Of a DNA stretch of 64,000 nt, positions 1,220 to 62,703 are shown piece by piece. Source of the stretch: Scyliorhinus canicula (taxonomy: Eukaryota); the NCBI RefSeq assembly GCF_902713615.1, contig NC_052164.1, forward strand, positions 79,893,830-79,957,829, read 5' to 3'. The translations under genes and the position numbers were made by a program. How positions within the stretch are numbered: position 1 is the stretch's first letter; each line of letters opens with the position of its first letter. The notes under the pieces were generated by a model that was not told the DNA's origin, did no database searches, and worked only from the letters and a program-made list of their open reading frames with translations.

Positions 1220-1435
1220 GGTTCTACTGTCCTGAAGGTGCTTCTCAGCCAGTCCCATGCGATCTTGGTCAATACTGTGAACAGTCTAGCCTTTCGAGCC
1301 CAACTGGACCATGTGCTGCTGGGTTCCTGTGTGATGGCAATGCATCAGTCATCAACCCAAAACCCTGCCCTGCCGGACATTACTGCCCAGCGGGAACAAG
1401 ATACGCCAAACCGTGTCCACGTGGAACCCTCTCCG
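1220..1435 (+). CDS. Exon 1 in window (GFYCPEGASQPVPC...CPRGTLS)
   Basis: cttcctcAG|...|GTgag, phase 1-1, 216 nt. Confidence 0.92.
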
Positions 1436-4400
1436 GTGAGCATGTTAGCTGCATTCATTTACAGTTTTACTTTTAGAAGAAGTTTTTGTTGCATTAAATC
1501 AAAAGCTGCATTTTCCATTGTGAAGACACAAAATCAGGGAAAGATCAACTCCGCCATCATGACCTTCAACATCCTCATTAATCAATATTCTTTCCCTGAA
1601 ATTGAAAAAGAAAATCTCTCAGCCAAATTAGGAGGGAAACAATCCCTGTAGAAATTCAATCTTTTAATTGCTTCTTAAAGGAATGTTCTATGCTTTCTCC
1701 CAGTAATATCTTCTCTGCTGCATTCAAATCATCATTTTCACATCCATATGATAGATCACTGCATTTACCAAACCCCATTTGTGGAACCATGGGCAGGATT
1801 CTCCCGCAATTTGCGGGACGGCCCAAACCGTCGGCAAGAGAGTCGCGAACCACTCCGGCATTGGGCCACCCGGAAGTTGCGGAATCCTCTTCGGGGGGCT
1901 AGGCCGGCGGCGGAGGGGTTGGCACCGTGCCAACCAGCGCCGAAGGGCCGCCGCCGGCGGGTGCGAGTTGGCGCATGCGCAGGACTGCCAGCGTGTTCTG
2001 GCACATGCGCAGAACCGCTGCCGTGTTTCCTGCGCATGTGCAGGGGGTTTCTTCTCCACGCCGGCCATGGCGGAGCCTTCCAGATGCCAGCGCGGAGGGA
2101 AAGAGTTCCGCTACGGCACATAAATCGGTGGGCCCCAATCGCGGGCCAGCCCCCCCCCCCCCCCCCCCCCCCCCCCTTCCAGGGAACCCCACTAGACGGC
2201 TGACAAGCCAGGTGCCGGCAGGATGGACCATGTCCATTTCACGCCGGCGGGACTGGCCGAAACCGGGTGGCCGCTCGGCCCATCGGGGCCCGGAGAATTG
2301 CCGGCGAGGCCGCTACCAACAGCCTCCCACCGGCGCGGCGCGATCCCCGCCCCTGCCCAAAAACCGGCGGCGGGGCGGGATTCACGCCACCCCCCGGCGA
2401 TTCTCCGACCCGGCGGGGGAGGTAGGAGAATCCCGTCCCATGTATCCCAGTCCTCTGGTACAAACTCTTGATCCCAAAGGAGATGCCAGCAGCAATCCAA
2501 TTGAGTTGCTAATGCTGCAGTTTTGCTCTATGGTATTTCATGTTTTACATATAAGGAGAAAAGTAAATGAATCCTTGAAAATTTTCAGGTCTGTTACAAG
2601 TCCTTGAAAAAAATGCCAGTAGGTGGCAGACAGGCAGCACTACTTAATTCACAATTTTCTTAACTGGTGAATTCTCCAAATGTACAATACTTCTTTCAAC
2701 ATGAGTTGGGGGGGGGGGGGGGGGAGGGCGGGAAATCCTTATGTGGAAACCTGAATCATACCTGAATCTCATGTCGAAAGAAACTCCCTCTCTCACACCT
2801 TCAGAGCAAGATTCCTACTAGAATCATAGACAGAATCATAGAATCGCTATAGTCGAGAATGGGGCCATCCGGCCCGTCTGGTCTGCACTGACTCTCAAAG
2901 AGCACTCCACCATGTCCACGTCCCCCATCCCCATAACTCTATACATTACTGGGCATATAGGGGTAATTTAGTATGGTCAATCCACCCAACCTGCGCATCT
3001 TTGGCCTGTGGGCCTAAACTGGAGCACTTGGAGGAAGCCCACGCAGACACAGTGAGAATGTGCAAACTCCACACAGTCACCCAAGGCTGGAAACAAACCT
3101 GGGTCCCTGGCGGTGTGAGGCAACAGTGCTAGCCACTGTGCCACCCTATGAGAAATGCCCAGCTTCCTTATCAATAAATCCATATTCTCGATAGTGCAAT
3201 CACTCCAAGAAGAGTTATTTTGTTCAGTTTCTCAGTAACGGATGCACCCTAACAATGGGCAAAAACCTTTAAGCCAAGACCTCCAATGTGTAATTACAAA
3301 ATAAATAAATTATCTGTCCTGTTGCCCACAGTCAGGGAATGAATCTGATCTTTCTCCATTTGGTAATGGAGTTGGGGCAGAGAGATCCACGTAAACTCAC
3401 TTTCTAAGGGGTGACAACTTGTTCTACATTGTGATATTGCCCACAAAATTGAGTGGGAAATTTGGTGTAAAGATATAAAAGTTTAAATATGGACATAGAA
3501 ATCTGATCAAAAACCATGAACCGTGAGTTATGGAGAGGAAATATGCATCCTGTTTTTTTTTAATTTAAAGTGCTCAATTCTGTTTTTCCAGTTAAAGGGC
3601 AGTTTAACGTGGCCGATCCACCTACCATTCACATCAATTGGGTTGTGGGGGTGAGACCCACGCAGATAAGGGGAGAATGTGCAAACACCACACGGACAGT
3701 GACCCGGGCCAGGATCGAACTCGGGGCCATGAGGCAGCAGTGCTAACCACTGCACCATCCAGCTACCCCATTGATTTTTAATGTAGATGTGTAAAGTACT
3801 TTTTAATAGAATATATAATTAATCATGAGGTGGTTGGGATGTTTTGTTAATTGACTCTTTGTCATTTTCCTCACACCAAGTTGGTCCAGGGGGAGTTGCT
3901 TTGACTGACTGCAATCTTTGCCCATCTGGCCATTATTGTGAGACCCACGGCCTGTCGGCTCCATCAGGTTTATGTTCCGCAGGGTATTATTGTCCAGGAG
4001 GACAGAGCATATCTGAGCCTTTGGATTACATATGTTCTCCAGGTCACTTCTGTCCCGAGGTCAGCATTATTTTATATTATGTTTTAAAAAATCTTTTGGT
4101 GAAGAAGTGCAGTAAAGTAACTTCATGGAATACCATTATGATGTATAAATTTGATGTTACTGATCTGGCTTTTCCCCCATACTTTTTCCATTGATCACAA
4201 TTAGAATAAAACGTTTGCATGTAGGACAGAATCATAGACCGGGATTCTCCATTGTGTATCCGCTCCGCTACCGCTGCTACCACGAATGGAGAATTTGCCG
4301 TTCTGTCAAATCTCCCATTCACTGCAGTGGGCCCAGAGAATCCTGATGCTGTGAATGGACGGAGATTCCACCCAGAGTCTTTATTGACATCTCTGGGTTT

Positions 4401-7400: not shown

Positions 7401-10400
7401 AAATACGCACCAAAATACCGCCCATCGTATTTATAGCTGTAACCAGACAAACGTTACCGAGGGTTTGTCAGGCCAGGGTCTTCAGAGAGCCAGATGCAGA
7501 GTGATATCAACTGCTACTCTCTGACTTGCAGCCACACACATCCCCCCCCCCCCCCCGACACCAGAAGTCGGGCCTAGCCTGTCAGCTGCATCTGAAACAT
7601 GCCTTGATTCTTTCAAGGATGCTTCCACACCCATGGAAAATGTTGTGGAGTGGCAGGGAGGGGCTCCGCTCAACCACATCGAGCGGGAGCAGCACATATT
7701 GGGGATACTGCAACACTGTCGGGAGCCTGTGGATTAACACCTTCCAGCACTTAAGTTTCCTTTCAGCCAGCCTGACTGTTATTCCAGGAGGGTGACCTTT
7801 CCCAGCAGGTGTTATAATGGGAGTCCTGCCTTGCCGTTTGGTCAAATCTGCTCGTGTACATGCATGACGCCAGATGTTAAGTTTTTATTTTGTAAGTATT
7901 TCCAATCCTCCTCAACAATGTGAGTAAGAAGTATTAGAAAAAGGGACATACATATATATATATTTAAAAGCAGAAGTTACATTAAAGCTACACTGCAGAT
8001 CTGTTTGTAAAGGCCATTGAGAAATTCTGAATAGGCTAAAAATCTGACAATTAGAACCTTGCTTCCCTGAATGATGCTACTCTTGATATTCACAGGGGAG
8101 TGCCAATCAATCCAGCTGTGCACCGGGTCATTACCAGCCCGAATGGGCAAAGAAAATATGTGAGGTTTGTCCTCCAGGAACCTACTGCCAAACTCCAGGT
8201 AAAAACTTAGTAAAATTATGCTAAAGGCGTATTTGCCATAGGATTGATGTGAAGCATGAAACTAATGACTGGTTACTCTCAAAAGTGTCCTCTCAAATGT
8301 TTCTTCTCTTCCCAGTTGATATTTCGGATTATGTTATTTTCTGTGTCCCTTTTTTCAAGGAGCACTCAAACCTGTCACTTGCCAATTGGGATCTTACTGT
8401 CCACCTGAATCTGCAAGCCTGCGCTTCTGTCCTGAGGGCACCTATGGGAACCGAACTGGGCTACACAAAGCATCAGACTGCCTGCCTTGTGACCCCGGAA
8501 TGTACTGTCAGGGTTCAGGTAACCTCCAATCACTTTGCCCTTTTCATCAAATATATGGCACAATTCAATAGGCGGTGTTGAATTCCTTTTGTAATGCACT
8601 AATAATCTGATACTCTTGGTGTGATTTCAACCACCCCCCCCCCCCCCCCCCCCCCCCTAAACTTGGTGTTAGACATGAACCTTGCGTAGTTCTCTTTTCT
8701 GCTCCATTTCCTCCCTAATGCTGCTAATTTTGCTGACAGCTGAGAGATTTGCCTGACTCGGCCAGGAGCCTCAATAACATCTGTTTATCAAGTCATGTAG
8801 ACCCCAATGGCATTTTAATAGCGTACTGAACAGGGCATGTGCCATAGGTACGCTATTCGGTAAATTTTGTAAGGAGAGCTTGCTAACCCATACAGTCTGG
8901 ACTCGCACAGGGAAAATAATTCTCTGCCAAATGGATGAAACGTGGGGTGAAGTTGACCAGATCTGAGTGTCAAAAGCCTCGAGGAGATGAGATGGGGGGT
9001 GGGGTTTGGAATAATTCAGAGTCATCAAATATTTGCCGAAACTTCTTGTTTTAATTTCTCTTCCATTATATGGTGGCCACCATCAATGGTTAGAATGGTT
9101 AGAGCAATGGTGGTGTGTGGCTGTACCTCGTGCATTTATTATTTTCTGACCAACTCCATGCAACATTGCATGTATTGAGAGAGTGACACATGGTGAGGAG
9201 CAGTGTCCCATTTTTGCAAACATGAGAGGTGAAAGCTGAAATGAATTACAATGCCACAGTGATTTTAAATTGACCCATTTGCCTAACCTTATGGTTAAAC
9301 TTGAACATTTCCAGATTTTGTTGCTTGATGCAATTTAAAAAAAATAAGTTTTACACCCTGGATTGAGCATCAAGCACCTTGAAACCAAGTTAGTTTTCTT
9401 TTTTGTGTATCTTCACACCCACGGTGCTTTTCTACCCTTTTGAGAAATAGCGGGGGCAAGTGGTGGAAGGAGTCCCAAGCTGTTTATCAGCCATTGAACA
9501 CTCCTGCTGTGGCCACCAAGCCCTGGCGTTGGACTCGAAACCAGAGCATCTGGTTCAGAGGTGTGCCGTAAGACCACCTACATCATCACGTTGGTTGAAT
9601 AGTGGCAACGTTTGCACAATGGACAAGCAATTTAACTTGTATTCTGGAACGTTGAGCATACTGCTGTGATTGAACTGAACTGGATAGTTGGTTTGCTTCT
9701 AATTCCTGGTTGATGTTCCCTCTGATAATAGCTAACATGAGGGGTACAGGAACAAGAAATGGCAGCAGCGAATTCAGCATCTGAAGGGAGTCTGTTGAGT
9801 TTGCATGAAGATTTGATCTGATAACTAAGGCTCCAAACGTCGTCGGCATCATTTAATACTTCACCACTGATGGGACAAATTCTCTGGGGTATTAAGAAGG
9901 TTCTCCCCTTGTCTTTGATTTATTTTGCCCCACATCCTCAAACAAATTGGCTGTTATCCAACAGCAGGTCGATTGTTAAGGGTTTAAACTCAGCAATTCT
10001 CTGCCAAATGGGTGACCTATGGCAGCCAGGTTGACCAAACCGGACTGTGTTGGGACACTCGCAATCCCTCAACTTTAGCTCTACCTGTGCAGAGTGGTCC
10101 TTACCATCTCAAATTCTCCACATCAAATAAAGAACCTGTAACTCTACTTCATCCTACTTCTGATCTTTCTTTGCTAAGGAACATTCAGAATAAATTTTAC
10201 CTTGCAGCTTCACATGGAGCTGTATCATGAATGTTATATTTAGTTTGTTTTTATCTGAAAGAAGGAAACTCGGAGAGGAAGATTTTTGTTGGCCACGTTT
10301 ATTTTGTTTTTACTTAAGGGAACACAGAGCCAACCGGACTGTGCAGTGCTGGATATACATGCATCCTGGGCGCCGCTCTGCCAACCCCAACTGATGGCAT

Positions 10401-55400: not shown

Positions 55401-57623
55401 GCAAATTATTATCTAAATGGATATAGATTGAAAGAGGGGAATGTGCAATGAGACCTGGGTGTCTTTCTACATCAGTCACTGAAAGTAAGTATGCAGGTGC
55501 AGCAGGTGGTAAAGAAGGCAAATAGTATGTTGACCTTTTATAGCAAGAGGATTTGAGCACATTGGCAGGAATGTCTTGCTGCAGTTATACAGGGTATCGG
55601 CGAGACCACACTTTGAACAGTGTGCACAGTTTTGGTCTCCTTATCTGAGGAAGGATTTTCTTACTGTAGATGGCGTGCAGAAAACGTTACCAGACTGATT
55701 CCTGGGATGGCGGTACTGACATATGAAGAGAGATTGAGTTGGTTAGGATTATATATGCAGGGGTTTTGAAGAATGATGGGGGATCGCATAGAAACCTATA
55801 AACGTCTAACAGAACTAGACAGGGAAGATGCAAGAAGGATGTTCCTTTTTTAAAATCAATTTAAAGTACCCAATTCGATTTTTCCGAATTAAGGGCAATT
55901 TAGCATGACCATTGCAAATACCCTGCACATCTTTGGGTTGTGGGGGTGAGATCCATGCAGACACAGAGAGAATGTACAAATTCCACACAGACAGTGACTC
56001 AGGCCAGGATCGAACCTGGATCCTCCACGGCATCAGGCAGCAGTGCTAACCACTGCACCACCTTGCAAGAAGGATGTTCCTAATGGCGATGGAGTCCAGA
56101 ACCAAGGATCGCAGCCGATGGCATAGTGGTTAGCACCGCTTCCTCGTAGTGCTGGGGACCCGGTTTCATTCCAGCTTTGAGTGACTGTGTGGAGTTTGCA
56201 TGTTCTCCCCATGTCTACGTGGGTTTACTCTGGGGGCTCTGGTTTCATCCCACAGTCCAAAGATATGCAGGTCAGGTGGATTGGCCATGACCAATGAGCA
56301 TGGTTACGGGGATAGGGTGAGGGAACGGGTCCTAGGTAGGTTATTCTTTCGGATGGTCATTGCAGACTCAATGAGCCAATTAGTCTCCTGAACTGTAGGG
56401 ATTCTATGGAATGCAACTATTGAGCCCATCAACTGTGTGCCGCACTCACAATTATGATGATAGACGGATGATTAGCAGCTAATAATGCACACCACAATTC
56501 AAAATAATCACTACCTTTTCAATAATGTTCATACTTCCGAATGGTTACCTTGCAATTTCATTGCTATTGCAGGATATTACTGTCTGCCGACTTTGATGAT
56601 TCCTGAGCTCTGTCTGCCAGGGTATTATTGTCTCCCTGGGACAGAGGAAGCCACTCAATATCCCTGTCCTCCAGGAACATACAATGGCCAGACAGGTATT
56701 GCAATTATTGACATTGTGATCGCAGATATGAAAATGTTTCTCACATATCTGAGCCTTCTGTGTGAAAGGCATGATTTCATAGTAGGGATTGAGACTCTGC
56801 CAATATAGAAAAGCTGCATTTACTTTTTAAAGAAAATGTTTCTGAACATGTTTTGAATTCCTGAAGAAATTTTAATGAGTTAACTGGTCGAATGAGAGAA
56901 AATGTTTCAAGATAAGTGTTGTGCTCTTGATGCTTAATTTTGTAGCAAGGGCACTAAGTTAATCCACAGTTCCATGACACACCTCACACTATCCCTTAAA
57001 CTCAAGTTCATAATATATCTCTCTTCAGGTATCAGAAGTGCGAGGGAGTGTCTGGTGTGCCCTGCAGGACAGCACTGTAATGCATCTGGCCTCACAGAAC
57101 CTTCTGGACTTTGTACTCCGGGCTATTACTGCACAGGGGGATCGACAACTGACAAACCAACAGCGAACCATTTAACTTGGAATGTTTCCTTGAACTCCAC
57201 CTCAGAGTAAGTGTTTAAAACCACCTTTTAGACCCTGTTTTTAAAATGCCATCTGATGTATTTTATTTTATGTCCATTGTGAATATACAGTGGGCGGAGT
57301 TTTTCCATTTTTTTGACCGAGAGCAGGGCCGGCTCAAGGTACCGGCAACTCGGGCAGTCGCCCGGGGCGCCATGTGCTAGGGGGCACCAACAAGGAGTGC
57401 ATGACCGGCGTCAGAGACCCGGCGCCGCGTAAACGACTCGGGTCCCACGCATGCGCAGTTGGGCCGGTGCCAACCAGCGCATGTGCGGTGGCTGCCCTCC
57501 CCCAGGCCGCCCCGCACAAACATGGCGGATGGATCCAGGCTCGCCGGTGGAAGAAAGGAGGCCTGCCGACAGAGAGACCGGCCCGCTGATCGGTGGGTCC
57601 CGATCATGTACCAGGTCATTCCG

Positions 57624-57657
<34 letters not shown>

Positions 57658-60600
57658 GTGAACGGAGCCCCCCCCCCGAAGGGCACCGAAGTTCAGCTTT
57701 CCCGGGGCGCCAGCCACCCTAGGGCCGTTTCTGCCGAGAGTCAACTCGGCCGGGAAAAGCGGGATGTCGCCCTCCGGCTGCACTGCCAGCCTTTCCAGCC
57801 AGAGTCAAAAGCAATCAAGGAGGCGGGCCCAATGACATCATGCTGGTGGGGTGGGCTTTGAATAAGCGTGCCCTGCGAGAAATTTGACTCCTGAAAGAGG
57901 AGCGCCCCAATGGAAAAAATATATTATTTCCTTCCCCCGGAAAGGAAACTCCATTCCCACCATCATGAAATCTCCCCCACCGTGGAACCCTGGCGCCTTG
58001 GAGTGTCAGGGTAAGTTCCCAGACAATGCCATGGGGTGGGTTCTGTTCGCCAGGAGAATATTGTGAGGACCTGTCGTAATTCAGACCGACGTGAATAGAC
58101 AGTCCAACTTGCAGGGAATATAAACATCTTATCTGCATGTTAATAGGGATCCCGATGTTTAAAGTTCCCCTCCCTGCTTGCTGGATCCCCTGTGCGGGGA
58201 GAGATCTCTCGAGGCTCCTGACGCAACCCCTAAGCACACTTCCCCCAAGCCCCAATTTGCCTATAAGTGGGTCCTCGGCCCCCTCCCCCGCACCCGTAAA
58301 GGGCACCCCAGGCTCGATCCCTGTTGCTTGAGTATTCCACCTTGGCAATCTGGCAGTGCCAGGCTGGCTGTGCCAGGGTGGCACCAGCAGTGTTAGGGTG
58401 CTTGCCCGGAGGGCAAGCACCTGGAGGCCTCCCATCTGCTGGGAGATGCCAACGAGTGCCGTTCCTTCTGGTCCCTGTTTTTGGAGACCAGCACTGAACG
58501 GCGCTCACCGGAAGTCTCCAAGGCGAATTCTTATCATAGAATTTACAGTGCAGAAGGAGGCCATTCGGCCCATCAGGTCTGCACCGGCTCTTGGAAAGAG
58601 CACCATACCCAAGGTCAACACCTCCACCCTATCCCCATAACCCAGTAACCCCACCCAACACTAAGGGCAATTTTGGACACTAAGGGCAATTTATCATGGC
58701 CAATCCACCTAACCTGCACACCTTTGGACTGTGGGAGGAAACCGGAGCACCCGGAGGAAACCTACGCACACACGGGGAGGATGTGCAGACTCCGCACGGA
58801 CAGTGACCCAAGCCGGAATCGAACCTGGGACCCTGGAGCTGTGAAGCAATTGTGCTAACCACAATGCTACCGTGCTGCCCACTCTCGATCTAATATCCAG
58901 ATTTGACAGTGATCCCGCCCAGAGTGAGTAATGTCATTCAGCCTTTCAAGCTTGCTCTGCTATTCAGTAAGATCATGGCCAATCTGATCTTGGCCTGTGC
59001 TCCACTTTCCTACCAGTCCTCCATAATGTTGACTCTTCAAGATTCTGGCTGGAAGAACATTCTTATTATTGTCTGGAAAAACAGGGGGATCAGCTAGTCA
59101 TCAGTCTGCAAGTCAGCTTTAAAATTCTAATTTTTTTTTGTCTTCATAGTTCCAGATAAGTCTGAAATTCCATTAACATTAAATCATATTCATTATTTTA
59201 ATGACCTTACTAGGTACAAGTGGTGTCCGGAACAATATTATTCAATAGGTGGGCTTTGCCCAGCAGGTCATTACTGTCCACCTGGATCTCCTAGTCCAGT
59301 ACCATGTGATGGAGGGAAATACTGTTCAAATCCAGGGCTTACCATGCCATCGGGTATGTTCATTCTTAAAATGCTACATGTAAATTACAGTTGAATCAGA
59401 AGGAACCCGTTTAGTTTCATGGGCTGGATTCTCTGCCGCGGGATGCTCCATTTTGCCGGCAGCCCGGGGGTTTCCCGACGGCGTGGGGCTACCCCACAAT
59501 GGGAAACCTCATTGACCAGCCGGCGTAACGGAGCATCCCGCCGACGGGAGGAACCTGAAATGTGGTGCAGAAGACTAGAGAATCCTGCCCCATAGCTTTT
59601 GCAAAGTCTGTGGTTTTAAGAAAAGTGATTTATTGAAACAGAAAAGCTGTCAGTTCTTATATTCTTTCAGTCTCCCTTTTAGTCAAATGTAAAGTGACTA
59701 ATTCTCTGTTTTTTTTTTACTCTGCTCCTGCCCTAATACTTTCCTGGCAGTACTGCTGTAAAGACATTTTCTACTGAACCCAGTGTTACCCCATAGATTT
59801 TTAAATGAATGTCTCTCTTGCAGGGGAGCACGATAGCATGGTGGTTAGCATAAATGCTTCACAGCTCCAGGGTCCCAGGTTCGATTCCCGGCTGGGTCAC
59901 TGTCTATGCGGAGTCTGCACGTCCTCCCCGTGTGTGCGTGGGTTTCCTCCGGGTGCTCCGGTTTCCTCCCACAGTCCAAAGATGTGCGGGTTAGGTGGAT
60001 TGGCCATGCTAAATTGCCCGTAGTGTCCTAAAAAGTAAGGTTAAGGGGGGGTTGTTTGGGTTACGGGTATAGGGTGGATACGTGGATTTGAGTAGGGTGA
60101 TCATTGCTCGGCACAACATTGAGGGCCGAAGGGCCTGTTCTGTGCTGTACTGTTCTAATTCTAATTCTAATTCTAATTCAATTCCGGCTTGGATTGCCTG
60201 ATTTGTGGTAGAAGTGAGATTTCTGGAGTTAAGCGCAAAGAAGAATTGTGTGATTTATGATTATTTTCCCCCACTTGCCGCAGGTGAATGTCTCGCAGGA
60301 TATTACTGCGATGCTGCCTCCACTCAGCCTGACCAACACATCTGCCCTGCTGGTCTCTACTGCCCGAGAGGCACAGCCATCCCTGTGCCTTGTCCTCCTG
60401 GTACTTACGGCAATAGCAGTAGGAACTGCGAAGAATCAGATTGCCAGCTTTGTCTCGGTGGACAGTACTGTGATGGTAAAAATGTCTAACCATGTTACAG
60501 CTAAATCTGGATCTAAGTAAAAGTTTGTGTGTCGGCAGGGTCATCAACAGAACAATGTGAACGTGCAGCTAAACATAAAATTACTCTGGCCGAATGAGAA

Positions 60601-61847
60601 ACTGTACAAGTTTAAAAGTAAATTAACATTGTAACCACTGTTCCTTCTAATCATGTTATGATTTAAAAGGACCGTTGCTTGTGTGCAGCCTGTTTGTCCC
60701 ACAAGTGGTACATTTCTGATTGCTGCATATCTTTGAGGAAATGTTCATTTTAACAGACGAGGAGATGATTTGCTCTGATAAAATTGCAGTGTGAAAAACT
60801 TGCAGTATGAATGCAATCCAAATAATTCTGTGTCGGGGAGAAAATGTATTGATGTTAGAATTCATATTTGTTTTGGTAATACTTAACACGTTCATAATGC
60901 AGCAGGAGATGGCCCAGTAATAATGTCTTTGGACTGATTTGGACCAGGTTCAATCTAAACACAAGAAAAAATCTGAAATCAAAAGCTAATCCCAGTAATG
61001 GGATGACATCTTTGGTTGATTATCATAACACCCCATCTGGCTCACTGATGCCCTTGCAGGAAGGAAATCTGCCATCCTTACCTGGCCTGGCCTACATGTG
61101 ACTACAGACTCACAGAAATGTGATTGACTCTTAACTACCCTATGAAATGGTCCAACAAACCATTCAATTGTATCAAATGCTTAAAAGAAATGAAACCGAC
61201 CAACCTAGGCACCAGACCCTGGCGACGCTGTAAATTCCTCCTTATTAGCATCTGGGGACTTGTGTCAAAATTGGAAGAGCTGTCCGACAGAATGATATGT
61301 GGGTGGGGGAAAGGAGACGGAAGACCTGAATGTCCATCTCCTCATGGGAATATGTCTGTACTCCACTCTGCATTTCCTCTCTCGTCAGCACACCCTGATT
61401 GCAGCATGGCCAAGATCAGGAACTCAACAATGAGTCAGTGAATGGCTCTTGTAGCTTCACATGCCAGTGTGTATTAATGATGCTGCACGTCCCTCATTAT
61501 GGCATCAGTGTTGCGTTTCTCATTATTTGCACAAGCGATGTGAAGGTTACTGGTCAGGTGCTTATTTATAATAAATGGTTTGTTGAAAAAACATTTCTCT
61601 AAAATGGTATTACTTCCTTTTCAAGGGCCCGGTAATGATGTCCCTGATGGTCCTTGCTCCCGGGGATTTTATTGCCCTCCGGGTCAAAGTTCACCTCGCC
61701 CCATACTGTTTGTCTGTCCAGTAAGCTTCTATTGCCCTGAAGGAACTTCCATTCCACTGCCATGCAAGGGAGGATCTTACCAAGCCAACGAAGGCCAGGA
61801 ATCATGTGACCCATGTCCAGCAGGTTTCTTTTGTCGGCTCACTAATG
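1220..61847 (+). CDS. Internal part (29 exons, ~1555 aa) of a giant cysteine-rich repeat protein, GCC2/GCC3 (Ephrin_rec_like) CPxGxYC type; 5' and 3' ends outside the window
   Basis: 29 exons with AG/GT boundaries and polypyrimidine tracts join in compatible phases (24 introns phase 1, one phase 0, three phase 2) to 4665 nt with no stop; continuous C-x2-G-x-[YF]-C repeats; many N-x-S/T sequons. Confidence 0.93.
1791..2438. mobile_element. PIF/Harbinger-type MITE (CpG-rich)
   Basis: TIRs gggcaggattctcc / ggagaatcccgtcc; TSD CAT on both sides; internal poly-C tract. Confidence 0.85.
2818..3146 (-). mobile_element. HE1-like tRNA-derived SINE
   Basis: Reverse-complement Pol III A/B-box head, conserved core, ttctatga-type tail. 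Confidence 0.85.
3551..3769 (-). mobile_element. Short poly(A)-tailed HE1-related SINE
   Basis: Same head and core as HE1, truncated core, A-rich tail. Confidence 0.8.
3881..4059 (+). CDS. Exon 2 (VGPGGVALTDCNLCPSGHYC...GHFCPE)
   Basis: caccaAG|...|GTcagc, phase 1-0; an in-frame alternative acceptor would start the exon at 3890. Confidence 0.88.
4238..4373. mobile_element. Short Harbinger-type MITE (diverged)
   Basis: gggattctcc ... ggagattccaccc ends. Confidence 0.55.
4442..5111. mobile_element. hAT (Charlie-like) non-autonomous DNA transposon
   Basis: TIR cagtgttcttcaaa / tttgaagaacactg; 8-bp TSD gtttaaac / gcttaaac. Confidence 0.85.
6547..6794. mobile_element. Deleted fragment of the GC-rich Harbinger-type MITE
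   Basis: Shares internal motifs (gccgctcggccc, attctcc) with full copies. Confidence 0.6.
6945..7215 (+). mobile_element. Old SINE-like repeat; related copy at about 60905-61150
   Basis: tRNA-like gggttcaaatcc box; shared tail segment cctggcctacatgtgactccagacccacag between the two copies. Confidence 0.55.
8096..8198 (+). CDS. Exon 3 (GSANQSSCAPGHYQ...GTYCQTP)
   Basis: ttcacAG|...|GTaaaa, phase 0-1. Confidence 0.92.
8360..8518 (+). CDS. Exon 4 (GALKPVTCQLGSYC...GMYCQGS)
   Basis: ttttcaAG|...|GTaacc, phase 1-1. Confidence 0.92.
10319..10481 (+). CDS. Exon 5 (GNTEPTGLCSAGYTC...CPKGTF)
   Basis: tacttaAG|...|GTattg, phase 1-2. Confidence 0.92.
11341..11983. mobile_element. Harbinger-type MITE lacking its left TIR
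   Basis: Right TIR ggaaaatcccgccc followed by CAT; internal similarity to 18196-18922. Confidence 0.8.
12312..12415 (+). CDS. Exon 6 (SEKQGLSEAHHCQPC...GLCWA)
   Basis: ttgacAG|...|GTaata, phase 2-1. Confidence 0.92.
12778..12957 (+). CDS. Exon 7 (GFYCLEGCATP...CTPCPS)
   Basis: cctttAG|...|GTtagt, phase 1-1. Confidence 0.92.
13195..13302 (+). CDS. Exon 8 (GFYCKEPG...PLDGLT)
   Basis: tctgcAG|...|GTacca, phase 1-1. Confidence 0.92.
13434..13757 (+). mobile_element. HE1-like SINE
   Basis: A/B-box head, core, ttctat tail. Confidence 0.88.
14297..14543 (+). mobile_element. HE1-like SINE, 5' truncated
   Basis: Core and tail only. Confidence 0.82.
14640..14850 (+). mobile_element. Short poly(A)-tailed HE1-related SINE
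   Basis: Head, truncated core and A-rich tail; flanking acaatgca repeat. Confidence 0.8.
15040..15175 (+). CDS. Exon 9 (GDICPVGHYC...GHLCTN)
   Basis: aatccAG|...|GTaagg, phase 1-2. Confidence 0.92.
16350..16488 (-). mobile_element. 3' tail fragment of the third SINE variant (as 44311-44584)
   Basis: Shared segment tagtcgccacact..gcctgttcgggtacac..aaattacctaa. Confidence 0.7.
16690..17589. mobile_element. Second non-autonomous DNA-transposon family (TGGCAC-rich interior); left end uncertain
   Basis: Right end ggttagatcaggccc; reverse-complement match to 61902-62200; interior related to about 58100-58520. Confidence 0.65.
17654..17787 (+). CDS. Exon 10 (RMQAEPCPHGSYC...CTPCL)
   Basis: ttctacAG|...|GTgaga, phase 2-1. 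Confidence 0.92.
17975..18110 (+). mobile_element. Penelope-like 3' terminal fragment
   Basis: ctctcc(c)cacagatgctg...ttcagattccagcatc motif; also at about 51630-51725 and 63230-63265. Confidence 0.6.
18196..18922. mobile_element. Harbinger-type MITE
   Basis: TIRs ggccggcattctc / gagaattccgccc; TSD CAG; close relative of 44829-45543 in opposite orientation. Confidence 0.88.
19157..19666. mobile_element. Harbinger-type MITE
   Basis: TIRs gggcggaattctcc / ggagaattgcgccc; TSD ATT. Confidence 0.88.
19963..20172 (+). CDS. Exon 11 (GGFYCSRPG...GTYNSET)
   Basis: atcctcAG|...|GTacag, phase 1-1. Confidence 0.92.
20724..21183 (+). mobile_element. CR1-clade LINE 3' fragment
   Basis: [42 protein letters not shown] is a typical CR1 ORF2 C-terminus. 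Confidence 0.85.
22183..22380 (+). CDS. Exon 12 (GQSLCQICLAGYFC...CLMCPP)
   Basis: cattcAG|...|GTaggt, phase 1-1. Confidence 0.92.
22410..22813. mobile_element. Older Harbinger-type MITE or composite
   Basis: ggcaggattt ... aaaattcaaccc ends; internal tcccgcc motifs. Confidence 0.5.
23368..24029. mobile_element. Harbinger-type MITE, same subfamily as 1791-2438
   Basis: TIRs cagcgggattctcc / ggagaatctggctg; TSD CTG. Confidence 0.85.
23937..23996 (+). repeat. (CCCCTG)n microsatellite, about 10 units
   Basis: Direct reading. Confidence 0.95.
24173..24274 (+). CDS. Exon 13 (GQFCERSG...SKPLPP)
   Basis: tttgttAG|...|GTatgt, phase 1-1. Confidence 0.92.
24750..25530 (+). mobile_element. Old, degraded CR1/L2-type LINE fragment
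   Basis: AGVPQ...LG RT motif remnant; related family at about 47530-48400 on the minus strand. Confidence 0.6.
25690..25997 (-). mobile_element. HE1-like SINE
   Basis: Head, core and tail on the minus strand. Confidence 0.85.
26548..26703 (+). CDS. Exon 14 (linker GEFTKSSECTGPADVSPGNR then CSPGFFC...LAEPT)
   Basis: cttttcAG|...|GTttga, phase 1-1. Confidence 0.9.
27092..29339 (-). mobile_element. L1-clade LINE, 5' truncated and internally deleted
   Basis: 14-bp TSD acagcaggattatt (27078-27091, 29340-29353); A-rich tail; ORF2 motifs ISLLNMDAKILAKVLA and IQLKVVYRAHLT; stops and frameshifts. Confidence 0.9.
28201..28922. mobile_element. Harbinger-type MITE nested in the L1 element
   Basis: TIRs gggcggaattctcc / agagaatcgcaccc; TSD CAT; removal restores L1 peptide ANVEKVWSWVRG. 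Confidence 0.9.
30291..30628 (+). mobile_element. HE1-like SINE, young subfamily
   Basis: Near-identical to 59824-60183. Confidence 0.9.
31173..31355 (+). CDS. Exon 15 (GPCDTGYYC...CLQCTP)
   Basis: tattctAG|...|GTatac, phase 1-1. Confidence 0.92.
31729..31890 (+). CDS. Exon 16 (GFFCEGIG...DPCPK)
   Basis: tttgttAG|...|GTaaaa, phase 1-1. Confidence 0.92.
32345..32670 (-). mobile_element. CR1-clade LINE 3' fragment
   Basis: RNYFSQRVVNLWNSLPQ motif and tail. Confidence 0.8.
33410..33616 (+). CDS. Exon 17 (GFYQARKGQPDCNAC...GLTSA)
   Basis: tcaatAG|...|GTaaat, phase 1-1; absent from the ORF track. Confidence 0.92.
33774..34002 (-). mobile_element. Short poly(A)-tailed HE1-related SINE
   Basis: 14-bp TSD cttacgttatatct / cttatgttatatct. 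Confidence 0.88.
34495..34674 (+). CDS. Exon 18 (AECDLCPPGQFC...AGSTA)
   Basis: gattctAG|...|GTaaga, phase 1-1. Confidence 0.92.
35218..35730 (-). mobile_element. Rex1/Babar-type LINE 3' fragment
   Basis: LTNIYRRTMESIFSGCITAWYGACSTQDHRKLQKVV is typical of the Rex-Babar ORF C-terminus; (aaatc)n tail. Confidence 0.8.
35763..36364. mobile_element. Harbinger-type MITE (diverged)
   Basis: TIRs ggacgggattttcc / ggagaatcaagccc; TSD not clean. Confidence 0.75.
36758..36907 (+). CDS. Exon 19 (GVDCPVGRYG...GYYCKL)
   Basis: aaaacAG|...|GTaact, phase 1-1. Confidence 0.92.
37510..38900 (-). mobile_element. Degraded Gypsy/Ty3 gag-protease fragment
   Basis: Gag remnant LVCGVNNEATQKKFLAE, zinc-knuckle remnant CYTCG, protease KVNGRILWMEVDIGS, KYQDVFQEELGKI; many stops. 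Confidence 0.8.
39053..39175 (+). CDS. Exon 20 (GAQTPNPDNKTYGVIC...YNPST)
   Basis: ttctcAG|...|GTatga, phase 1-1. Confidence 0.92.
40072..42380 (+). pseudogene. Decayed Harbinger Myb/SANT-like (Myb_DNA-bind_5, NAIF1/MSANTD-like) gene; exons about 40072-40289, 40511-40667, 40822-42380
   Basis: MAAPRRFAPR..LDAVEERRAILCP..NWRDVGISVSA..EQCCKKLHD then NKTAHNHRGHARTGRG; GT/AG introns; frameshifts and a TAG at 42147. Confidence 0.78.
41568..42125 (+). repeat. 21-bp minisatellite TCTCAGCAGGCCATGGC[GC]CAG, 26 full units plus a partial, encoding heptad SQQAMAQ
   Basis: Direct count: (42114-41568)/21 = 26. Confidence 0.97.
43035..43500 (+). mobile_element. CR1-clade LINE 3' fragment
   Basis: MLPGM..SYEESLSRLGLFSL, IEVYKIMRG, TRGH motifs; (ttcttg)n-like tail. 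Confidence 0.85.
44086..44220 (+). CDS. Exon 21 (GRGSLAACLPC...QPNPQ)
   Basis: ttcgtAG|...|GTatgt, phase 1-1. Confidence 0.92.
44311..44584 (-). mobile_element. HE1-related SINE with a third, unrelated 3' tail
   Basis: Same head and core; after the core it diverges to a tail shared with 16350-16488. Confidence 0.8.
44797..45686 (+). mobile_element. HE1-like SINE remnant interrupted by a MITE
   Basis: Core continues across the insert (gggtttcctctgggttatctg|atttcctcacggtccaaag). Confidence 0.75.
44829..45543. mobile_element. Harbinger-type MITE
   Basis: TIRs gggcggaattctcc / ggagaatttcaccc; TSD CTG. Confidence 0.9.
46060..47087 (+). mobile_element. Ancient Deu-domain-type SINE (SacSINE1/AmnSINE1-like), split by a mini-MITE (46180-46270) and a solo LTR
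   Basis: gagggagtgctgc..ggaggtgcc..tttgaatgagatg core and tgtataaatgcaag tail recalled as DeuSINE-like; reverse copy around 25555-26160. Confidence 0.55.
46448..46990 (+). mobile_element. Solo LTR
   Basis: TG...CA ends with inverted termini tgtcatg / cataaca; AATAAA at 46831. Confidence 0.75.
47234..47458 (+). CDS. Exon 22 (DGESGGVCPGGFYC...SPCPA)
   Basis: ttttcAG|...|GTgagt, phase 1-1. Confidence 0.92.
47530..48400 (-). mobile_element. Old CR1/L2-type LINE 3' fragment
   Basis: MQQHLDKIQAGADK and LSTIYKAK-type ORF2 remnants; related + strand piece at about 45800-46050. Confidence 0.65.
48402..48740 (+). mobile_element. L1-clade ORF2 C-terminal fragment
   Basis: RVNASTSCVRLESIQLKVVHRAHLT, same family as 27092-29339. 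Confidence 0.75.
48852..50300 (-). mobile_element. CR1-clade LINE 3' part interrupted by a MITE
   Basis: HVQQAIKRANGMLAFVARRLEYRS and RFTRLIPG..EERL motifs. Confidence 0.85.
49423..50105. mobile_element. Harbinger-type MITE, same subfamily as 19157-19666
   Basis: TIRs gggcggaattctct / ggagaattgcgccc; TSD AAT. Confidence 0.9.
50386..50517 (+). CDS. Exon 23 (GTYGGRIG...GHYCIS)
   Basis: acttcAG|...|GTaagc, phase 1-1. Confidence 0.92.
51066..51391 (+). mobile_element. HE1-like SINE
   Basis: Head, core and tail. Confidence 0.88.
52666..52830 (+). CDS. Exon 24 (GVNIPNPG...CRTCPA)
   Basis: ttttcAG|...|GTaaat, phase 1-1. Confidence 0.92.
54264..54505 (+). mobile_element. Short poly(A)-tailed HE1-related SINE
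   Basis: 13-bp TSD ataaaagatttaa. Confidence 0.88.
54832..55158 (-). mobile_element. HE1-like SINE inside the CR1
   Basis: Head, core and (ttctatg)n tail. Confidence 0.88.
55847..56063 (-). mobile_element. Short poly(A)-tailed HE1-related SINE
   Basis: 18-bp TSD tgcaagaaggatgttcct (55829-55846, 56064-56081). Confidence 0.88.
56110..56408 (+). mobile_element. HE1-like SINE (older)
   Basis: Head, core and tail. Confidence 0.8.
56573..56695 (+). CDS. Exon 25 (GYYCLPT...YNGQT)
   Basis: attgcAG|...|GTattg, phase 1-1. Confidence 0.92.
57029..57206 (+). CDS. Exon 26 (GIRSARECLVC...linker HLTWNVSLNSTS)
   Basis: tcttcAG|...|GTaagt, phase 1-2. Confidence 0.9.
57324..57733. mobile_element. hAT-like MITE
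   Basis: cagggccggc... / ...gggccgtttctg ends; flanking direct repeat ccgagag. Confidence 0.65.
58533..58880 (-). mobile_element. HE1-like SINE
   Basis: Full head, core and tail. Confidence 0.9.
59214..59353 (+). CDS. Exon 27 (EYKWCPEQYYSIGGLCPAGHYC...LTMPS)
   Basis: ttactAG|...|GTatgt, phase 2-1. Confidence 0.9.
59421..59590. mobile_element. Short (170 bp) Harbinger-type MITE
   Basis: TIRs gggctggattctct / agagaatcctgccc; TSD CAT. Confidence 0.85.
59824..60183 (+). mobile_element. HE1-like SINE, young subfamily
   Basis: (ttctaa)n tail; near-identical to 30291-30628. Confidence 0.9.
60284..60475 (+). CDS. Exon 28 (GECLAGYYC...GQYCD)
   Basis: gccgcAG|...|GTaaaa, phase 1-1. Confidence 0.92.
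61626..61847 (+). CDS. Exon 29 (GPGNDVPDGPCSRGFYC...CRLTN); gene continues beyond the window
   Basis: tttcaAG|...|GTgaga, phase 1-1. Confidence 0.92.
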
Positions 61848-62383: not shown

Positions 62384-62703
62384 GGGCAGCAAGGTAGCGC
62401 AAGTGGGTCGCACTGTGGCATCACAGCGCCAGGGTCCCAGGTTCGATTCCCCGCTGGGTCACTGCCTGTGCGGAGTCGGCACGTTCTCCACATGTCTGCG
62501 TGGGTTTCCTCCGGGTGCTCCGGTTTCCTCCCGAAGTCCAAGGACGTGCCGGTTGGGTGGATTGGCCATGATAAATTGGAGAGTGACCAAAATGGTTAGG
62601 AGGGATTATTGGGTTACAGGGAAAGAGTAGAAGTGGGGGCCTAAGTGGGTCGGTGCAGACTCAATGGGCCGAATGGCCTCCTTCTGCACTGTATGTTCTG
62701 TGT
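62384..62703 (+). mobile_element. HE1-like SINE
   Basis: Head, core and tail. Confidence 0.88.

What the first reader, a model, noticed from the sequence alone, without database searches (positions are those of the whole stretch)
1220..61847. Intact giant CPxGxYC-repeat protein in a shark, of a type best known from protists
Seen: at least 1555 uninterrupted codons over 29 exons, nearly all Cys/Gly/Pro repeats with many N-glycosylation sequons and no other domain; exons are intact although the introns are saturated with transposons. Knowledge: GCC2/GCC3 (Pfam PF07699 Ephrin_rec_like) repeats occur in a few copies in SCUBE/SVEP1, whereas very long arrays typify apicomplexan and ciliate cysteine-repeat surface proteins. 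From memory and unverified, uncharacterised vertebrate loci such as zebrafish si:ch211-286b4.4 and mouse Gm9195/Gm32742 have this architecture. Inference: an ancient, functionally unstudied extracellular rod, tether or receptor family retained in vertebrates. This is the best candidate for an undescribed system in the window.
Basis: partly seen in the sequence, partly recalled or inferred. Interest (0 to 1): 0.75.

Follow-up and report, generated by a model that had tools for sequence, protein, structure and literature searches.

The report
Giant cysteine-repeat membrane protein gene
The window holds 29 intact internal exons, about a fifth, of a roughly 460-kb shark gene for a ~7,800-residue single-pass membrane protein made mostly of cysteine-knotted repeats; the gene is conserved from placozoans to mammals, and I found no functional study of it.

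Summary
On the + strand, 29 AG/GT-bounded exons run from 1220 to 61847. They give 4,656 nt, or 1,552 codons, with no stop.

My spliced model aligns without internal gaps to the annotated bamboo-shark protein (79% identity) and to the stingray protein (71%). 164 of 168 cysteines are conserved.

The window is only an internal fifth of the gene. The gene spans at least 460 kb on contig C19. By the stingray orthologue it encodes, in order:
- a signal peptide;
- about 88 eight-cysteine units of about 78 residues (weak PF07699 Ephrin_rec_like);
- a conserved ~400-residue juxtamembrane module (EGF-like part plus cupredoxin-like sandwich);
- one transmembrane helix;
- a ~670-residue cytoplasmic tail with a coiled coil, a zincin-like domain that keeps HxxxH but lacks the catalytic Glu, and PF15874.

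Searches anchored on the non-repeat C-terminus find true orthologues in all vertebrate classes. Orthologues also occur in amphioxus, echinoderms, Hydra, Trichoplax and an ichthyosporean. Automatic names such as 'zonadhesin-like' and 'SCO-spondin-like' are misnomers.

I found no functional study. The function proposed here, a very long stiff surface rod that acts as tether or contact sensor and is coupled to a pseudo-protease tail, is inference. Expression in this shark could not be shown. The scan has no earlier report of this gene.

The parts
1220..1435 (+). exon 1 of 29 in window (216 nt, phase 1-1)
   Evidence: AG/GT, open frame; 83% identity to P0177 and 69% to P0168, no indel in the shark
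3890..4059 (+). exon 2 (170 nt; the following intron is phase 0)
   Evidence: 86% / 73% identity
8096..8198 (+). exon 3 (103 nt)
   Evidence: 77% / 66%
8360..8518 (+). exon 4 (159 nt)
   Evidence: 79% / 77%
10319..10481 (+). exon 5 (163 nt; the following intron is phase 2)
   Evidence: 87% / 65%
12312..12415 (+). exon 6 (104 nt)
   Evidence: 71% / 63%
12778..12957 (+). exon 7 (180 nt)
   Evidence: PF07699 18 bits; 70% / 54%
13195..13302 (+). exon 8 (108 nt)
   Evidence: 81% / 64%
15040..15175 (+). exon 9 (136 nt; the following intron is phase 2)
   Evidence: 60% / 76%
17654..17787 (+). exon 10 (134 nt)
   Evidence: 71% / 80%
19963..20172 (+). exon 11 (210 nt)
   Evidence: 84% / 79%
22183..22380 (+). 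exon 12 (198 nt)
   Evidence: 77% / 74%
24173..24274 (+). exon 13 (102 nt)
   Evidence: 82% / 71%
26548..26703 (+). exon 14 (156 nt)
   Evidence: 75% / 67%
31173..31355 (+). exon 15 (183 nt)
   Evidence: 80% / 70%
31729..31890 (+). exon 16 (162 nt)
   Evidence: 78% / 83%
33410..33616 (+). exon 17 (207 nt)
   Evidence: 83% / 74%
34495..34674 (+). exon 18 (180 nt)
   Evidence: 83% / 70%
36758..36907 (+). exon 19 (150 nt)
   Evidence: 76% / 80%
39053..39175 (+). exon 20 (123 nt)
   Evidence: 80% / 68%
44086..44220 (+). exon 21 (135 nt)
   Evidence: 80% / 71%
47234..47458 (+). exon 22 (225 nt, the longest)
   Evidence: PF07699 21.8 bits; query of the library search; 84% / 72%
50386..50517 (+). exon 23 (132 nt)
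   Evidence: 84% / 80%
52666..52830 (+). exon 24 (165 nt)
   Evidence: 82% / 80%
56573..56695 (+). exon 25 (123 nt; weak donor)
   Evidence: 78% / 76%
57029..57206 (+). exon 26 (178 nt; the following intron is phase 2)
   Evidence: 76% / 63%
59214..59353 (+). exon 27 (140 nt)
   Evidence: 68% / 60%
60284..60475 (+). exon 28 (192 nt)
   Evidence: 78% / 67%
61626..61847 (+). exon 29 (222 nt); the gene continues with an exon at about 64030-64179, which starts just past the window's end
   Evidence: PF07699 25.6 bits, above the 23.1 cut-off; 82% / 66%

Best explanation
WHAT IT IS (shown). The 29 exons are an internal block of one very large gene. The block corresponds to residues ~4340-5900 of the 7,861-residue stingray orthologue. 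The gene runs on the + strand of contig C19 from about 291 kb upstream of the window to beyond 167 kb downstream. It is the shark orthologue of the vertebrate gene known only by placeholder names (mouse-type 'predicted gene 9195', zebrafish-type 'si:ch211-286b4.4').

By the full-length stingray protein, the product is a type I membrane protein with these parts, in order:
- a signal peptide;
- about 6,900 residues of tandem ~78-residue units, each with 8 cysteines at spacings 6-10-14/17-3-6-12-6-14/18, built of C-x2-G-x-Y-C hairpin modules of the TNFR / Ephrin_rec_like (GCC2/GCC3) kind;
- a ~400-residue conserved juxtamembrane module (an EGF-like cysteine part plus a cupredoxin-like beta-sandwich);
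- one transmembrane helix;
- a ~670-residue cytoplasmic tail with a coiled coil, a zincin-like alpha/beta domain that keeps an HxxxH helix motif but has no Glu after the first His, and a PF15874 segment.

HOW IT MOST LIKELY WORKS (inferred). The disulfide-stapled units stack end to end into a stiff, glycosylated filament. Scaled from the known size of TNFR-type cysteine-rich domains (about 40 residues per 2.5-3 nm), the filament would be several hundred nanometres long and anchored in the plasma membrane. Such a molecule would act as a long-range tether, spacer or contact/strain sensor at the cell surface. The invariant juxtamembrane module and the tail would couple events outside the cell to partners inside it. 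The zincin-like domain more likely serves as a binding (pseudo-protease) module than as an enzyme.

My confidence in the identity and architecture is about 0.95. My confidence in the rod/tether-sensor mechanism is about 0.3.
For: - Gene model: 29 exons, 1,552 codons, no stop.
- Exon-by-exon collinearity with P0168 (window = residues 4340-5900) and with P0177 (residues 606-2168).
- Gapless alignment at 79% and 71% identity, with 164 of 168 Cys conserved.
- Repeat exons on the same strand from C19:79602541, and a tail exon at C19:80061085-80061396 that is not the last one.
- 96% of P0177 residues 20-3732 are found in order in the 264 kb I hold. The only stops lie in intron read-through at the ends of matches.
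- The non-repeat C-terminus matches only this locus in the genome.
- Orthologues anchored on the non-repeat part occur in frogs, crocodilians, lizards, birds, teleosts, sturgeon, sharks, a ray, rodents, carnivores, bats, amphioxus, a hemichordate, echinoderms, a tunicate, Hydra, Trichoplax, molluscs and Chromosphaera.
- Signal peptide, single TM helix and Cys density profile.
- Unit periodicity of 78 residues and the Cys spacing pattern.
- Juxtamembrane model: pLDDT 85, pTM 0.83. It has a cupredoxin-like sandwich: pseudoazurin Z 6.2, 97 residues aligned, rmsd 2.7.
- Tail model: core pLDDT above 90. The best structural matches are all zincins: Wss1 Z 9.0, abylysin 8.0, selecase 7.3, Spartan 6.4 and aminopeptidase N. 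Foldseek agrees: selecase and jannalysin at probability 0.99, Wss1 at 0.96, and OMA1, SprT-like and YbeY in Swiss-Prot models.
- The HxxxH motif sits on the predicted helix.
- PF15874 scores 70-73 bits in the ray and alligator tails.
- Sequons are enriched 2.3-fold.
- Exons do not cross-match as DNA, so the array is old and each unit is individually conserved.
- The zebrafish orthologue is higher in testis than in ovary (bioRxiv 10.1101/650218).
Against: - No direct evidence of transcription or splicing in this shark. The run index gives only partial shares (0.29, 0.26 and 0.19 of a stretch that is 48% exon) in runs whose type is a guess.
Intactness of the whole gene is therefore inferred from orthologues.
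- The rod geometry was not modelled here, and the length estimate comes from general knowledge.
- The fold matches are middling (Z 6-9, Foldseek E above 0.01), and a profile search of PDB sequences found nothing.
- The first His of HxxxH is lost in sauropsids, and the candidate third ligand (Glu) is missing in several teleosts. Metal binding may therefore not be general.
- No ligand, partner, cell type or phenotype is known.
Confidence: 0.6

Rival explanations
1. A shed or secreted matrix protein, as the automatic names 'SCO-spondin-like' and 'zonadhesin-like' suggest. On this reading the ectodomain is released and builds an extracellular fibre or coat, and the membrane anchor is only a delivery device.
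For: Many orthologues carry these names. The ectodomain is huge, glycosylated and cysteine-rich. The zebrafish orthologue is testis-biased, as zonadhesin is.
Against: Pfam finds none of the domains that define SCO-spondin or zonadhesin (VWD, TIL, LDLa, TSR, MAM). It finds only PF07699 and PF15874. The TM helix and a structured tail of about 270 to more than 1,600 residues are conserved from Chromosphaera to vertebrates. That is hard to explain for a mere delivery anchor.
Confidence: 0.15
2. A signalling receptor whose cytoplasmic zincin-like domain is an active metallohydrolase, switched on by ligand binding or by tension on the repeats.
For: The tail core has a zincin fold with an HxxxH motif on the active-site-like helix. 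The motif is conserved from Chromosphaera and Trichoplax to fish and sharks.
Against: The residue after the first His is A, S, T or V, never Glu, so the general base of every HExxH zincin is missing. The first His is N or S in birds, crocodilians and lizards. The downstream Glu is absent in several teleosts.
Confidence: 0.1
3. A decaying or non-functional repeat array (a pseudogene or annotation artefact) that merely happens to be open in this window.
For: Expression in this shark is not shown. Pfam support for the repeats is marginal. The frog model is flagged 'LOW QUALITY'.
Against: There are 1,552 codons in 29 exons without a stop, and all splice sites are canonical. Identity to a ray is 71%, with 68% identity at non-Cys positions and 98% of cysteines kept. 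No exon is invaded by the repeats that fill the introns.
Confidence: 0.02

Closest known systems
Vertebrate placeholder genes 'predicted gene 9195' (Gm9195, rodents) and 'si:ch211-286b4.4' (teleosts), and the RefSeq models 'zonadhesin isoform X4' (Chiloscyllium plagiosum) and 'uncharacterized protein' (Hemitrygon akajei)
   Same: They are orthologues. They share the repeat units, the juxtamembrane module, the single TM helix and the tail. The elasmobranch models are exon-by-exon collinear with the shark locus, at 71-79% identity over the window.
   Different: Lengths differ greatly: about 7,800 residues in the ray and, by inference, in this shark; 4,000-5,400 in frogs, birds and teleosts; 2,500-3,600 in the mammalian models. 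No function is attached to any of them.
Pfam PF07699 Ephrin_rec_like (GCC2/GCC3) modules, as in SVEP1, SCUBE1-3 and ELAPOR1/2
   Same: The same kind of small disulfide-rich hairpin module with C-x2-G-x-Y-C. The HMM matches exon 29 at 25.6 bits and the ray N-terminus at 173 bits.
   Different: Those proteins have a few copies among CUB, EGF, sushi, VWA or MRH domains (from my knowledge of those families). Here about 88 composite 8-Cys units make up about 88% of the protein, and the central units are barely recognised by the HMM (25.0 bits over 1,563 residues).
Apicomplexan cysteine repeat modular proteins (CRMPs; PMC9815656)
   Same: Giant surface proteins with cysteine-rich repeats of a related kind. 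They are needed for contact-triggered rhoptry discharge, so they give a precedent for a contact-sensor role.
   Different: According to that paper, CRMPs are multi-pass proteins that pair through their TM bundles, and the paper calls them apicomplexan-specific. This family has one TM helix and its own juxtamembrane and tail domains.
Minimal zincins: Wss1/SprT/Spartan and the minigluzincins (selecase, abylysin, jannalysin)
   Same: The predicted fold of the tail core: a three-stranded sheet plus a helix carrying two His residues four positions apart. Z 7.3-9.0; Foldseek probability 0.96-0.99.
   Different: There is no Glu after the first His. No sequence-level match was found. The domain sits in the tail of a membrane protein.
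Giant single-pass or adhesion-type surface proteins of sensory and ciliated cells (usherin, ADGRV1, PKHD1L1, fibrocystin)
   Same: This is a resemblance in design only: thousands of residues of tandem extracellular modules on a membrane anchor, with links or coats as the function. The comparison is from my own knowledge and was not tested.
   Different: The module types are unrelated (laminin/FN3, Calx-beta, IPT/PbH1). No homology was found or claimed.

Membership tests
Orthologous group of Gm9195 / si:ch211-286b4.4 | Collinear, exon-by-exon correspondence with annotated members | tested here: met
   The window corresponds to P0168 residues 4340-5900 and P0177 residues 606-2168, in order, at 51-87% identity per exon. 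The spliced model aligns without internal gaps.
Orthologous group of Gm9195 / si:ch211-286b4.4 | The non-repeat juxtamembrane module, TM helix and tail are encoded downstream at the same locus | tested here: met
   Unique matches (no second hit) lie from window +105 kb to +167 kb, for P0003 residues 3685-4603 and P0168 residues 6646-7410.
Orthologous group of Gm9195 / si:ch211-286b4.4 | The named members really belong: their match lies outside the repeats | tested here: met
   Betta 'si:ch211-286b4.4' covers 100% of the 916-residue C-terminal query at E = 0. Peromyscus 'Predicted gene 9195' covers 68% at E = 3.5e-249.
Pfam PF07699 Ephrin_rec_like (GCC2/GCC3) | HMM score at or above the gathering cut-off of 23.1 bits | tested here: met
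   Marginal in the window: exon 29 scores 25.6, exon 22 scores 21.8, exon 7 scores 18.0. The orthologous 1,563 residues score 25.0. The signal is strong elsewhere in the protein: 173 bits in P0168 residues 1-900.
SCO-spondin / zonadhesin (automatic names of many orthologues) | VWD, TIL, LDLa and TSR domains (SCO-spondin), or MAM, VWD and mucin domains (zonadhesin) | tested here: not met
   Pfam scans of P0003 (whole), of P0168 and P0001 ends and of P0177 residues 606-2168 give only PF07699, PF15874 and overlapping small Cys-domain models.
Apicomplexan CRMPs | A multi-pass TM core with EGF-like domains (PMC9815656) | tested here: not met
   A hydropathy scan finds one TM helix besides the signal peptide in most orthologues scanned; Peromyscus P0224 shows one extra, weaker segment. 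The paper's description was read.
Zincin metallopeptidases (cytoplasmic domain only) | Zincin fold: mixed sheet plus active-site helix | tested here: met
   Wss1 Z 9.0 (109 residues aligned, rmsd 3.1), abylysin 8.0, selecase 7.3. Foldseek gives the same families. The scores are middling, so this is a fold assignment, not proof of homology.
Zincin metallopeptidases (cytoplasmic domain only) | HExxH motif with a catalytic Glu | tested here: not met
   The motif is H-[ASTV]-x-[AST]-H. No sequence of the 37 has Glu after the first His, and the first His is lost in sauropsids.
Cupredoxins / ephrins (juxtamembrane sandwich only) | Greek-key sandwich with Cys/His/Met copper ligands | tested here: inconclusive
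   The fold match is modest: pseudoazurin Z 6.2, ephrin-A1 Z 4.0-4.4. The invariant columns do not form a Cys-His-Met ligand set, but I did not map them residue by residue.
Expressed, spliced gene in this shark | Junction-spanning RNA reads | tested here: inconclusive
Three small runs from two studies hold 0.19-0.29 of the words of a stretch that is 48% exon, but their type is a guess.

The most novel reading that the evidence does not exclude
The family is an unrecognised, ancient eukaryotic class of surface machine. In this reading it is a half-micron, disulfide-stapled rod whose invariant juxtamembrane module and pseudo-zincin tail convert contact or tension at a distance from the cell into an intracellular signal. 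Such a machine could be used, for example, by sperm or ciliated and sensory epithelia. It would be functionally parallel to the contact-triggered secretion sensors of alveolates, and it would have been shortened or lost in some mammals.
Probability: 0.15. Interest if true: 0.8.

Novelty: new member of a known kind. Interest (0 to 1): 0.5.

Why it matters
At about 7,800 residues (by its stingray orthologue) this is a very large protein, and its gene is present from Trichoplax and Hydra to mammals. Yet it has only placeholder or wrong automatic names, and I found no functional paper.

This report gives three things. First, a checked exon model for the shark. Second, evidence that 'zonadhesin-like' and 'SCO-spondin-like' are misnomers. 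Third, a domain map outside the repeats: an EGF-like plus cupredoxin-like juxtamembrane module, one TM helix, a coiled coil, a zincin-like domain without the catalytic Glu, and PF15874.

That map turns 'a long cysteine repeat' into testable hypotheses. Knockouts of the zebrafish and mouse orthologues are feasible, and the tail domain is small enough for biochemistry. The shark and ray versions are the longest vertebrate forms seen here, which makes them useful for asking why the number of units varies threefold among vertebrates.

Tried and rejected
- My first Cys-density filter found only 18 exons. A motif scan over 264 kb then found all 29.
- Two automatic exon-chaining scripts gave poor boundaries. 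I replaced them with manual curation from splice scores and phases, which I then validated against orthologues.
The outer parts of the gene are therefore known only as match coordinates.
- The first call to the run index failed because the machine was busy.
- A search of PDB sequences with a repeat stretch found nothing. The same search with the tail profile also found nothing.
- Foldseek against PDB gave no significant match for either model.
- I first took PF15874 to be the zincin-like core. It is not: it lies about 100 residues further towards the C-terminus (P0168 residues 7724-7808, against the core at about 7495-7630). The shark exon that encodes the core has no Pfam match.
- CRMP membership was rejected: CRMPs are multi-pass.
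- Literature searches on GCC2/GCC3, Ephrin_rec_like, Gm9195, ch211-286b4.4 and CXorf65 gave no functional study.
- A search from the oyster paralogue, meant to look for arthropod or nematode members, returned only 10 proteins: an annelid, a brachiopod and oomycetes among them, and no ecdysozoan. It is too shallow to claim absence.
- I did not use complex prediction, because I claim no binding pair.
Full report
LOCATION AND OBSERVATION. The window is G000:C19:79893830-79957829, + strand, in a 4.22-Gb genome. Another note of this scan calls the genome a catshark; I did not verify that.

A six-frame scan shows, on the + strand only, a series of short open segments. They are rich in Cys, Gly and Pro and carry motifs of the form C-x2-G-x-Y-C and CP-x-G-T-Y. 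I ranked acceptors and donors with simple splice-site scores and required compatible phases. This gave a model of 29 exons. All have AG/GT boundaries. Together they are 4,656 nt = 1,552 codons with no stop.

Of the 29 intron junctions that follow these exons, 25 are phase 1. Introns measure 161-4,910 nt, with a median near 2 kb. The product has G 14.1%, P 12.8% and C 10.8%. It has 14 N-x-S/T sequons, where composition shuffles give 6.2 +/- 2.3.

One fifth of the non-exon DNA has further copies within the window itself, including a ~300-bp family with up to 15 copies. No exon base does. The transposon-rich introns and clean exons are therefore real. The exons also do not cross-match as DNA, so the protein repeats are old.

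VALIDATION OF THE MODEL. I searched a 1.84-billion-protein library with exon 22. It returned 259 proteins at E <= 1e-30, most of them thousands of residues long with dozens of matched stretches. The named ones include vertebrate models: Discoglossus (4,605 aa), Megalops, and Scleropages 'SCO-spondin-like'. They also include giant proteins of Chromosphaera, Fabomonas, Intoshia and Blastocystis.

The frog protein is collinear with the locus at both ends. Its last ~900 residues match unique, non-repeat exons downstream of the window. I searched again with only that non-repeat C-terminus. This found two elasmobranch models: Hemitrygon akajei P0168 (7,861 aa) and Chiloscyllium plagiosum P0177 (4,098 aa, an N-terminally shorter isoform).

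Both are exon-by-exon collinear with the shark locus. The window corresponds to P0168 residues 4340-5900 and P0177 residues 606-2168. My spliced protein aligns to them over 1,547-1,551 columns with at most nine indel residues, at 71% and 79% identity. 164 of 168 cysteines are kept, and identity at non-Cys positions is 68% and 77%. This corroborates every exon boundary and shows strong constraint on each unit.

THE WHOLE GENE. The window's upstream edge is far from the 5' end. Position -100 kb already corresponds to P0168 residue 2588. Repeat exons on the same strand reach back to C19:79602541, about 291 kb upstream. Downstream, the repeats end near +101 kb and unique exons follow to at least +167.6 kb. 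The tail exon found there ends at a donor rather than at the orthologue's C-terminus, so the gene continues further.

Within the 264 kb that I could fetch, 96% of P0177 residues 20-3732 are found in order. The only stops lie in intron read-through at the ends of matches. The non-repeat C-terminus matches nowhere else in the genome. Further flank could not be fetched. The outer ~2,600 N-terminal residues and the last ~350 residues are therefore inferred from orthologues.

ARCHITECTURE, READ FROM THE FULL-LENGTH RAY PROTEIN AND CHECKED IN OTHERS. P0168 starts with a hydrophobic signal-like segment. It keeps 9-15 Cys per 100 residues for about 6,900 residues. It then has a ~280-residue stretch almost free of Cys, one TM helix (7175-7193) and a 668-residue tail. 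A hydropathy scan finds one TM helix besides the signal peptide in frog, alligator, chicken, Betta, amphioxus, Hydra, Trichoplax, a hemichordate, a tunicate and Chromosphaera; Peromyscus shows one extra, weaker segment.

In the window the Cys spacings repeat as 6-10-14/17-3-6-12-6-14/18. That is eight Cys per unit, and the strongest self-similarity lag is 78 residues. The window holds about 20 units and the whole protein about 88.

Pfam recognises only PF07699 Ephrin_rec_like. The signal is strong near the N-terminus of the ray protein (173 bits) but marginal in the central units (25.0 bits over the orthologous 1,563 residues). Overlapping small-Cys-domain models also hit: TNFR_c6, NCD3G and the ELAPOR1 TNFR-like model.

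THE NON-REPEAT PARTS. The ~396 residues before the TM helix align across 36 orthologues from shark to Chromosphaera, with 22 invariant columns. They fold with confidence (pLDDT 85, pTM 0.83). The fold is a cysteine-rich, EGF-like N-terminal part followed by a beta-sandwich. The sandwich is cupredoxin-like: pseudoazurin Z 6.2, 97 residues aligned, rmsd 2.7, with plastocyanin, amicyanin and, more weakly, ephrin-A1 below it.

In AlphaFold DB the same module turns up in fragments of vertebrate orthologues. It also turns up in an 'Ephrin type A/B receptor-like domain-containing' entry, U6GX88 (E 2.4e-23, 21% identity). A search from the divergent oyster paralogue finds the module in an annelid, a brachiopod and, at 30% identity, in oomycete proteins. 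The module, and not only the repeat, is therefore old in eukaryotes.

The tail has three recognisable parts. The first is a coiled-coil-like stretch just inside the membrane, 83-87% identical between this shark and the bamboo shark and ray. The second is a core of ~135 residues that folds with pLDDT above 90. The third is a PF15874 segment further towards the C-terminus (70-73 bits in ray and alligator).

Two aligners place the core among zincins. VIA-align gives Wss1 Z 9.0, abylysin 8.0, an Aquifex YbeY-like protein 8.0, selecase 7.3, Spartan 6.4 and several aminopeptidase N catalytic domains. Foldseek gives selecase and jannalysin at probability 0.99, Wss1 at 0.96, and OMA1, SprT-like, HtpX and MecR1 among Swiss-Prot models.

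The helix that corresponds to the zincin active-site helix carries L-x-H-x3-H-I-K-x-G. This motif is conserved from Chromosphaera and Trichoplax to fish and sharks. However, the residue after the first His is never Glu, the first His is replaced in sauropsids, and the possible third ligand varies. I read this as a zincin-derived domain that has lost catalysis. The scores are middling and no sequence-level link exists, so this is a fold assignment with moderate confidence.

WHAT IS KNOWN. The C-terminus-anchored search lists orthologues in frogs, alligator, lizards, birds, sturgeon and paddlefish, many teleosts, sharks and a ray. It also lists rodents, carnivores, bats, alpaca, amphioxus, a hemichordate, echinoderms, a tunicate, Hydra, Trichoplax and molluscs. 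Their names are 'uncharacterized', 'hypothetical', 'TNFR-Cys domain-containing', or the misleading 'zonadhesin(-like)', 'SCO-spondin(-like)', 'SVEP1', 'SCUBE3' and 'notch 3-like'. None of the domains that define those proteins is present.

No primate sequence appeared among the listed hits. That is an observation on truncated lists, not evidence of loss.

Full-text searches found Gm9195 only in two gene lists. They found si:ch211-286b4.4 only as one of 14 genes higher in zebrafish testis than ovary (10.1101/650218). Searches on the domain names found nothing on a metazoan family.

The best-studied giant cysteine-repeat surface proteins are the apicomplexan CRMPs. They are multi-pass proteins of a different architecture (PMC9815656).

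EXPRESSION IN THIS SHARK. This was not settled. No indexed run on record as RNA holds the stretch. One small run of guessed type holds 0.07 of the words of a 5.8-kb stretch that is 15% exon. It and two runs of another study hold 0.19-0.29 of a 718-nt stretch that is 48% exon. That is what exon-only contigs would give, but it is not proof. I worked beside those places from then on.

MECHANISM. Three things are shown: a single-pass membrane topology, an ectodomain made almost wholly of small disulfide-stapled modules, and strong conservation of every unit, of the juxtamembrane module and of the tail. The rest is inferred.

Modules of this kind (TNFR-type cysteine-rich domains) are elongated and stack end to end, at about 40 residues per 2.5-3 nm. 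By that scaling, ~6,900 residues would give a stiff filament of several hundred nanometres standing on the membrane. The most economical reading is a long-range tether, spacer or contact/strain sensor. The juxtamembrane module and the pseudo-zincin tail would couple it to intracellular partners.

A shed matrix protein and an active tail protease are the main rivals, and a pseudogene is excluded. I put identity and architecture at about 0.95 and the mechanism at about 0.3.

VERDICT. The gene is already present in public annotation under placeholder names, so it is a new member of a known, though unstudied, kind. The added value here is the validated shark model, the exposure of the misnomers and the domain map outside the repeats.

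Noticed in passing
window 40801-42330 (+), inside intron 20 (39176-44085): A 509-aa open frame, the longest in the window. My Pfam scan of the ORF found no family at E <= 0.01. Part of it (41560-42127) has up to 7 further copies in the window.
   Followed up: partly
window 13440-13750, 14640-14823, 25778-25992, 30296-30612, 51067-51380, 54265-54448, 58536-58880, 59829-60078, 62384-62699 and others: A ~300-bp interspersed repeat in both orientations, with 10-15 copies inside the window. It carries a recurring pseudo-frame rich in Cys (…GHCLCGVCT.SPC.RGF…) that a naive Cys filter mistakes for exons. An intron stretch near 47540-47600 matched at least 39 other genomic places at 81-96% identity.
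   Followed up: partly
window 23850-24005 (+): A simple repeat that reads as (Pro-Cys)n in one frame. It lies in the intron just before exon 13 and is not part of the gene model.
   Followed up: no
orthologue lists: The number of units varies about threefold among vertebrates: the ray has 7,861 aa, frogs, birds and teleosts 4,000-5,400, and mammalian models 2,500-3,600. No primate sequence was among the listed hits. In sheep and dolphin annotation the orthologue is fused to the ATP12A model, which suggests the two genes are neighbours in mammals.
   Followed up: no
P0290, P0291, P0293 (Phytophthora) and P0292 (Pythium): Oomycete proteins of 4,000-7,900 aa match the juxtamembrane module at 30-34% identity. 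Three of them also carry PWWP and PHD Pfam domains, an odd combination that may be a gene-model fusion.
   Followed up: no
invertebrate and Chromosphaera orthologues (P0238, P0247, P0227, P0004, P0005): Their cytoplasmic tails are 1,600-2,300 residues long, against ~670 in the ray. The zincin-like core sits near the C-terminal end of the tail. The extra tail sequence was not analysed.
   Followed up: no
They lie in an intron and play no part in the finding.
   Followed up: no
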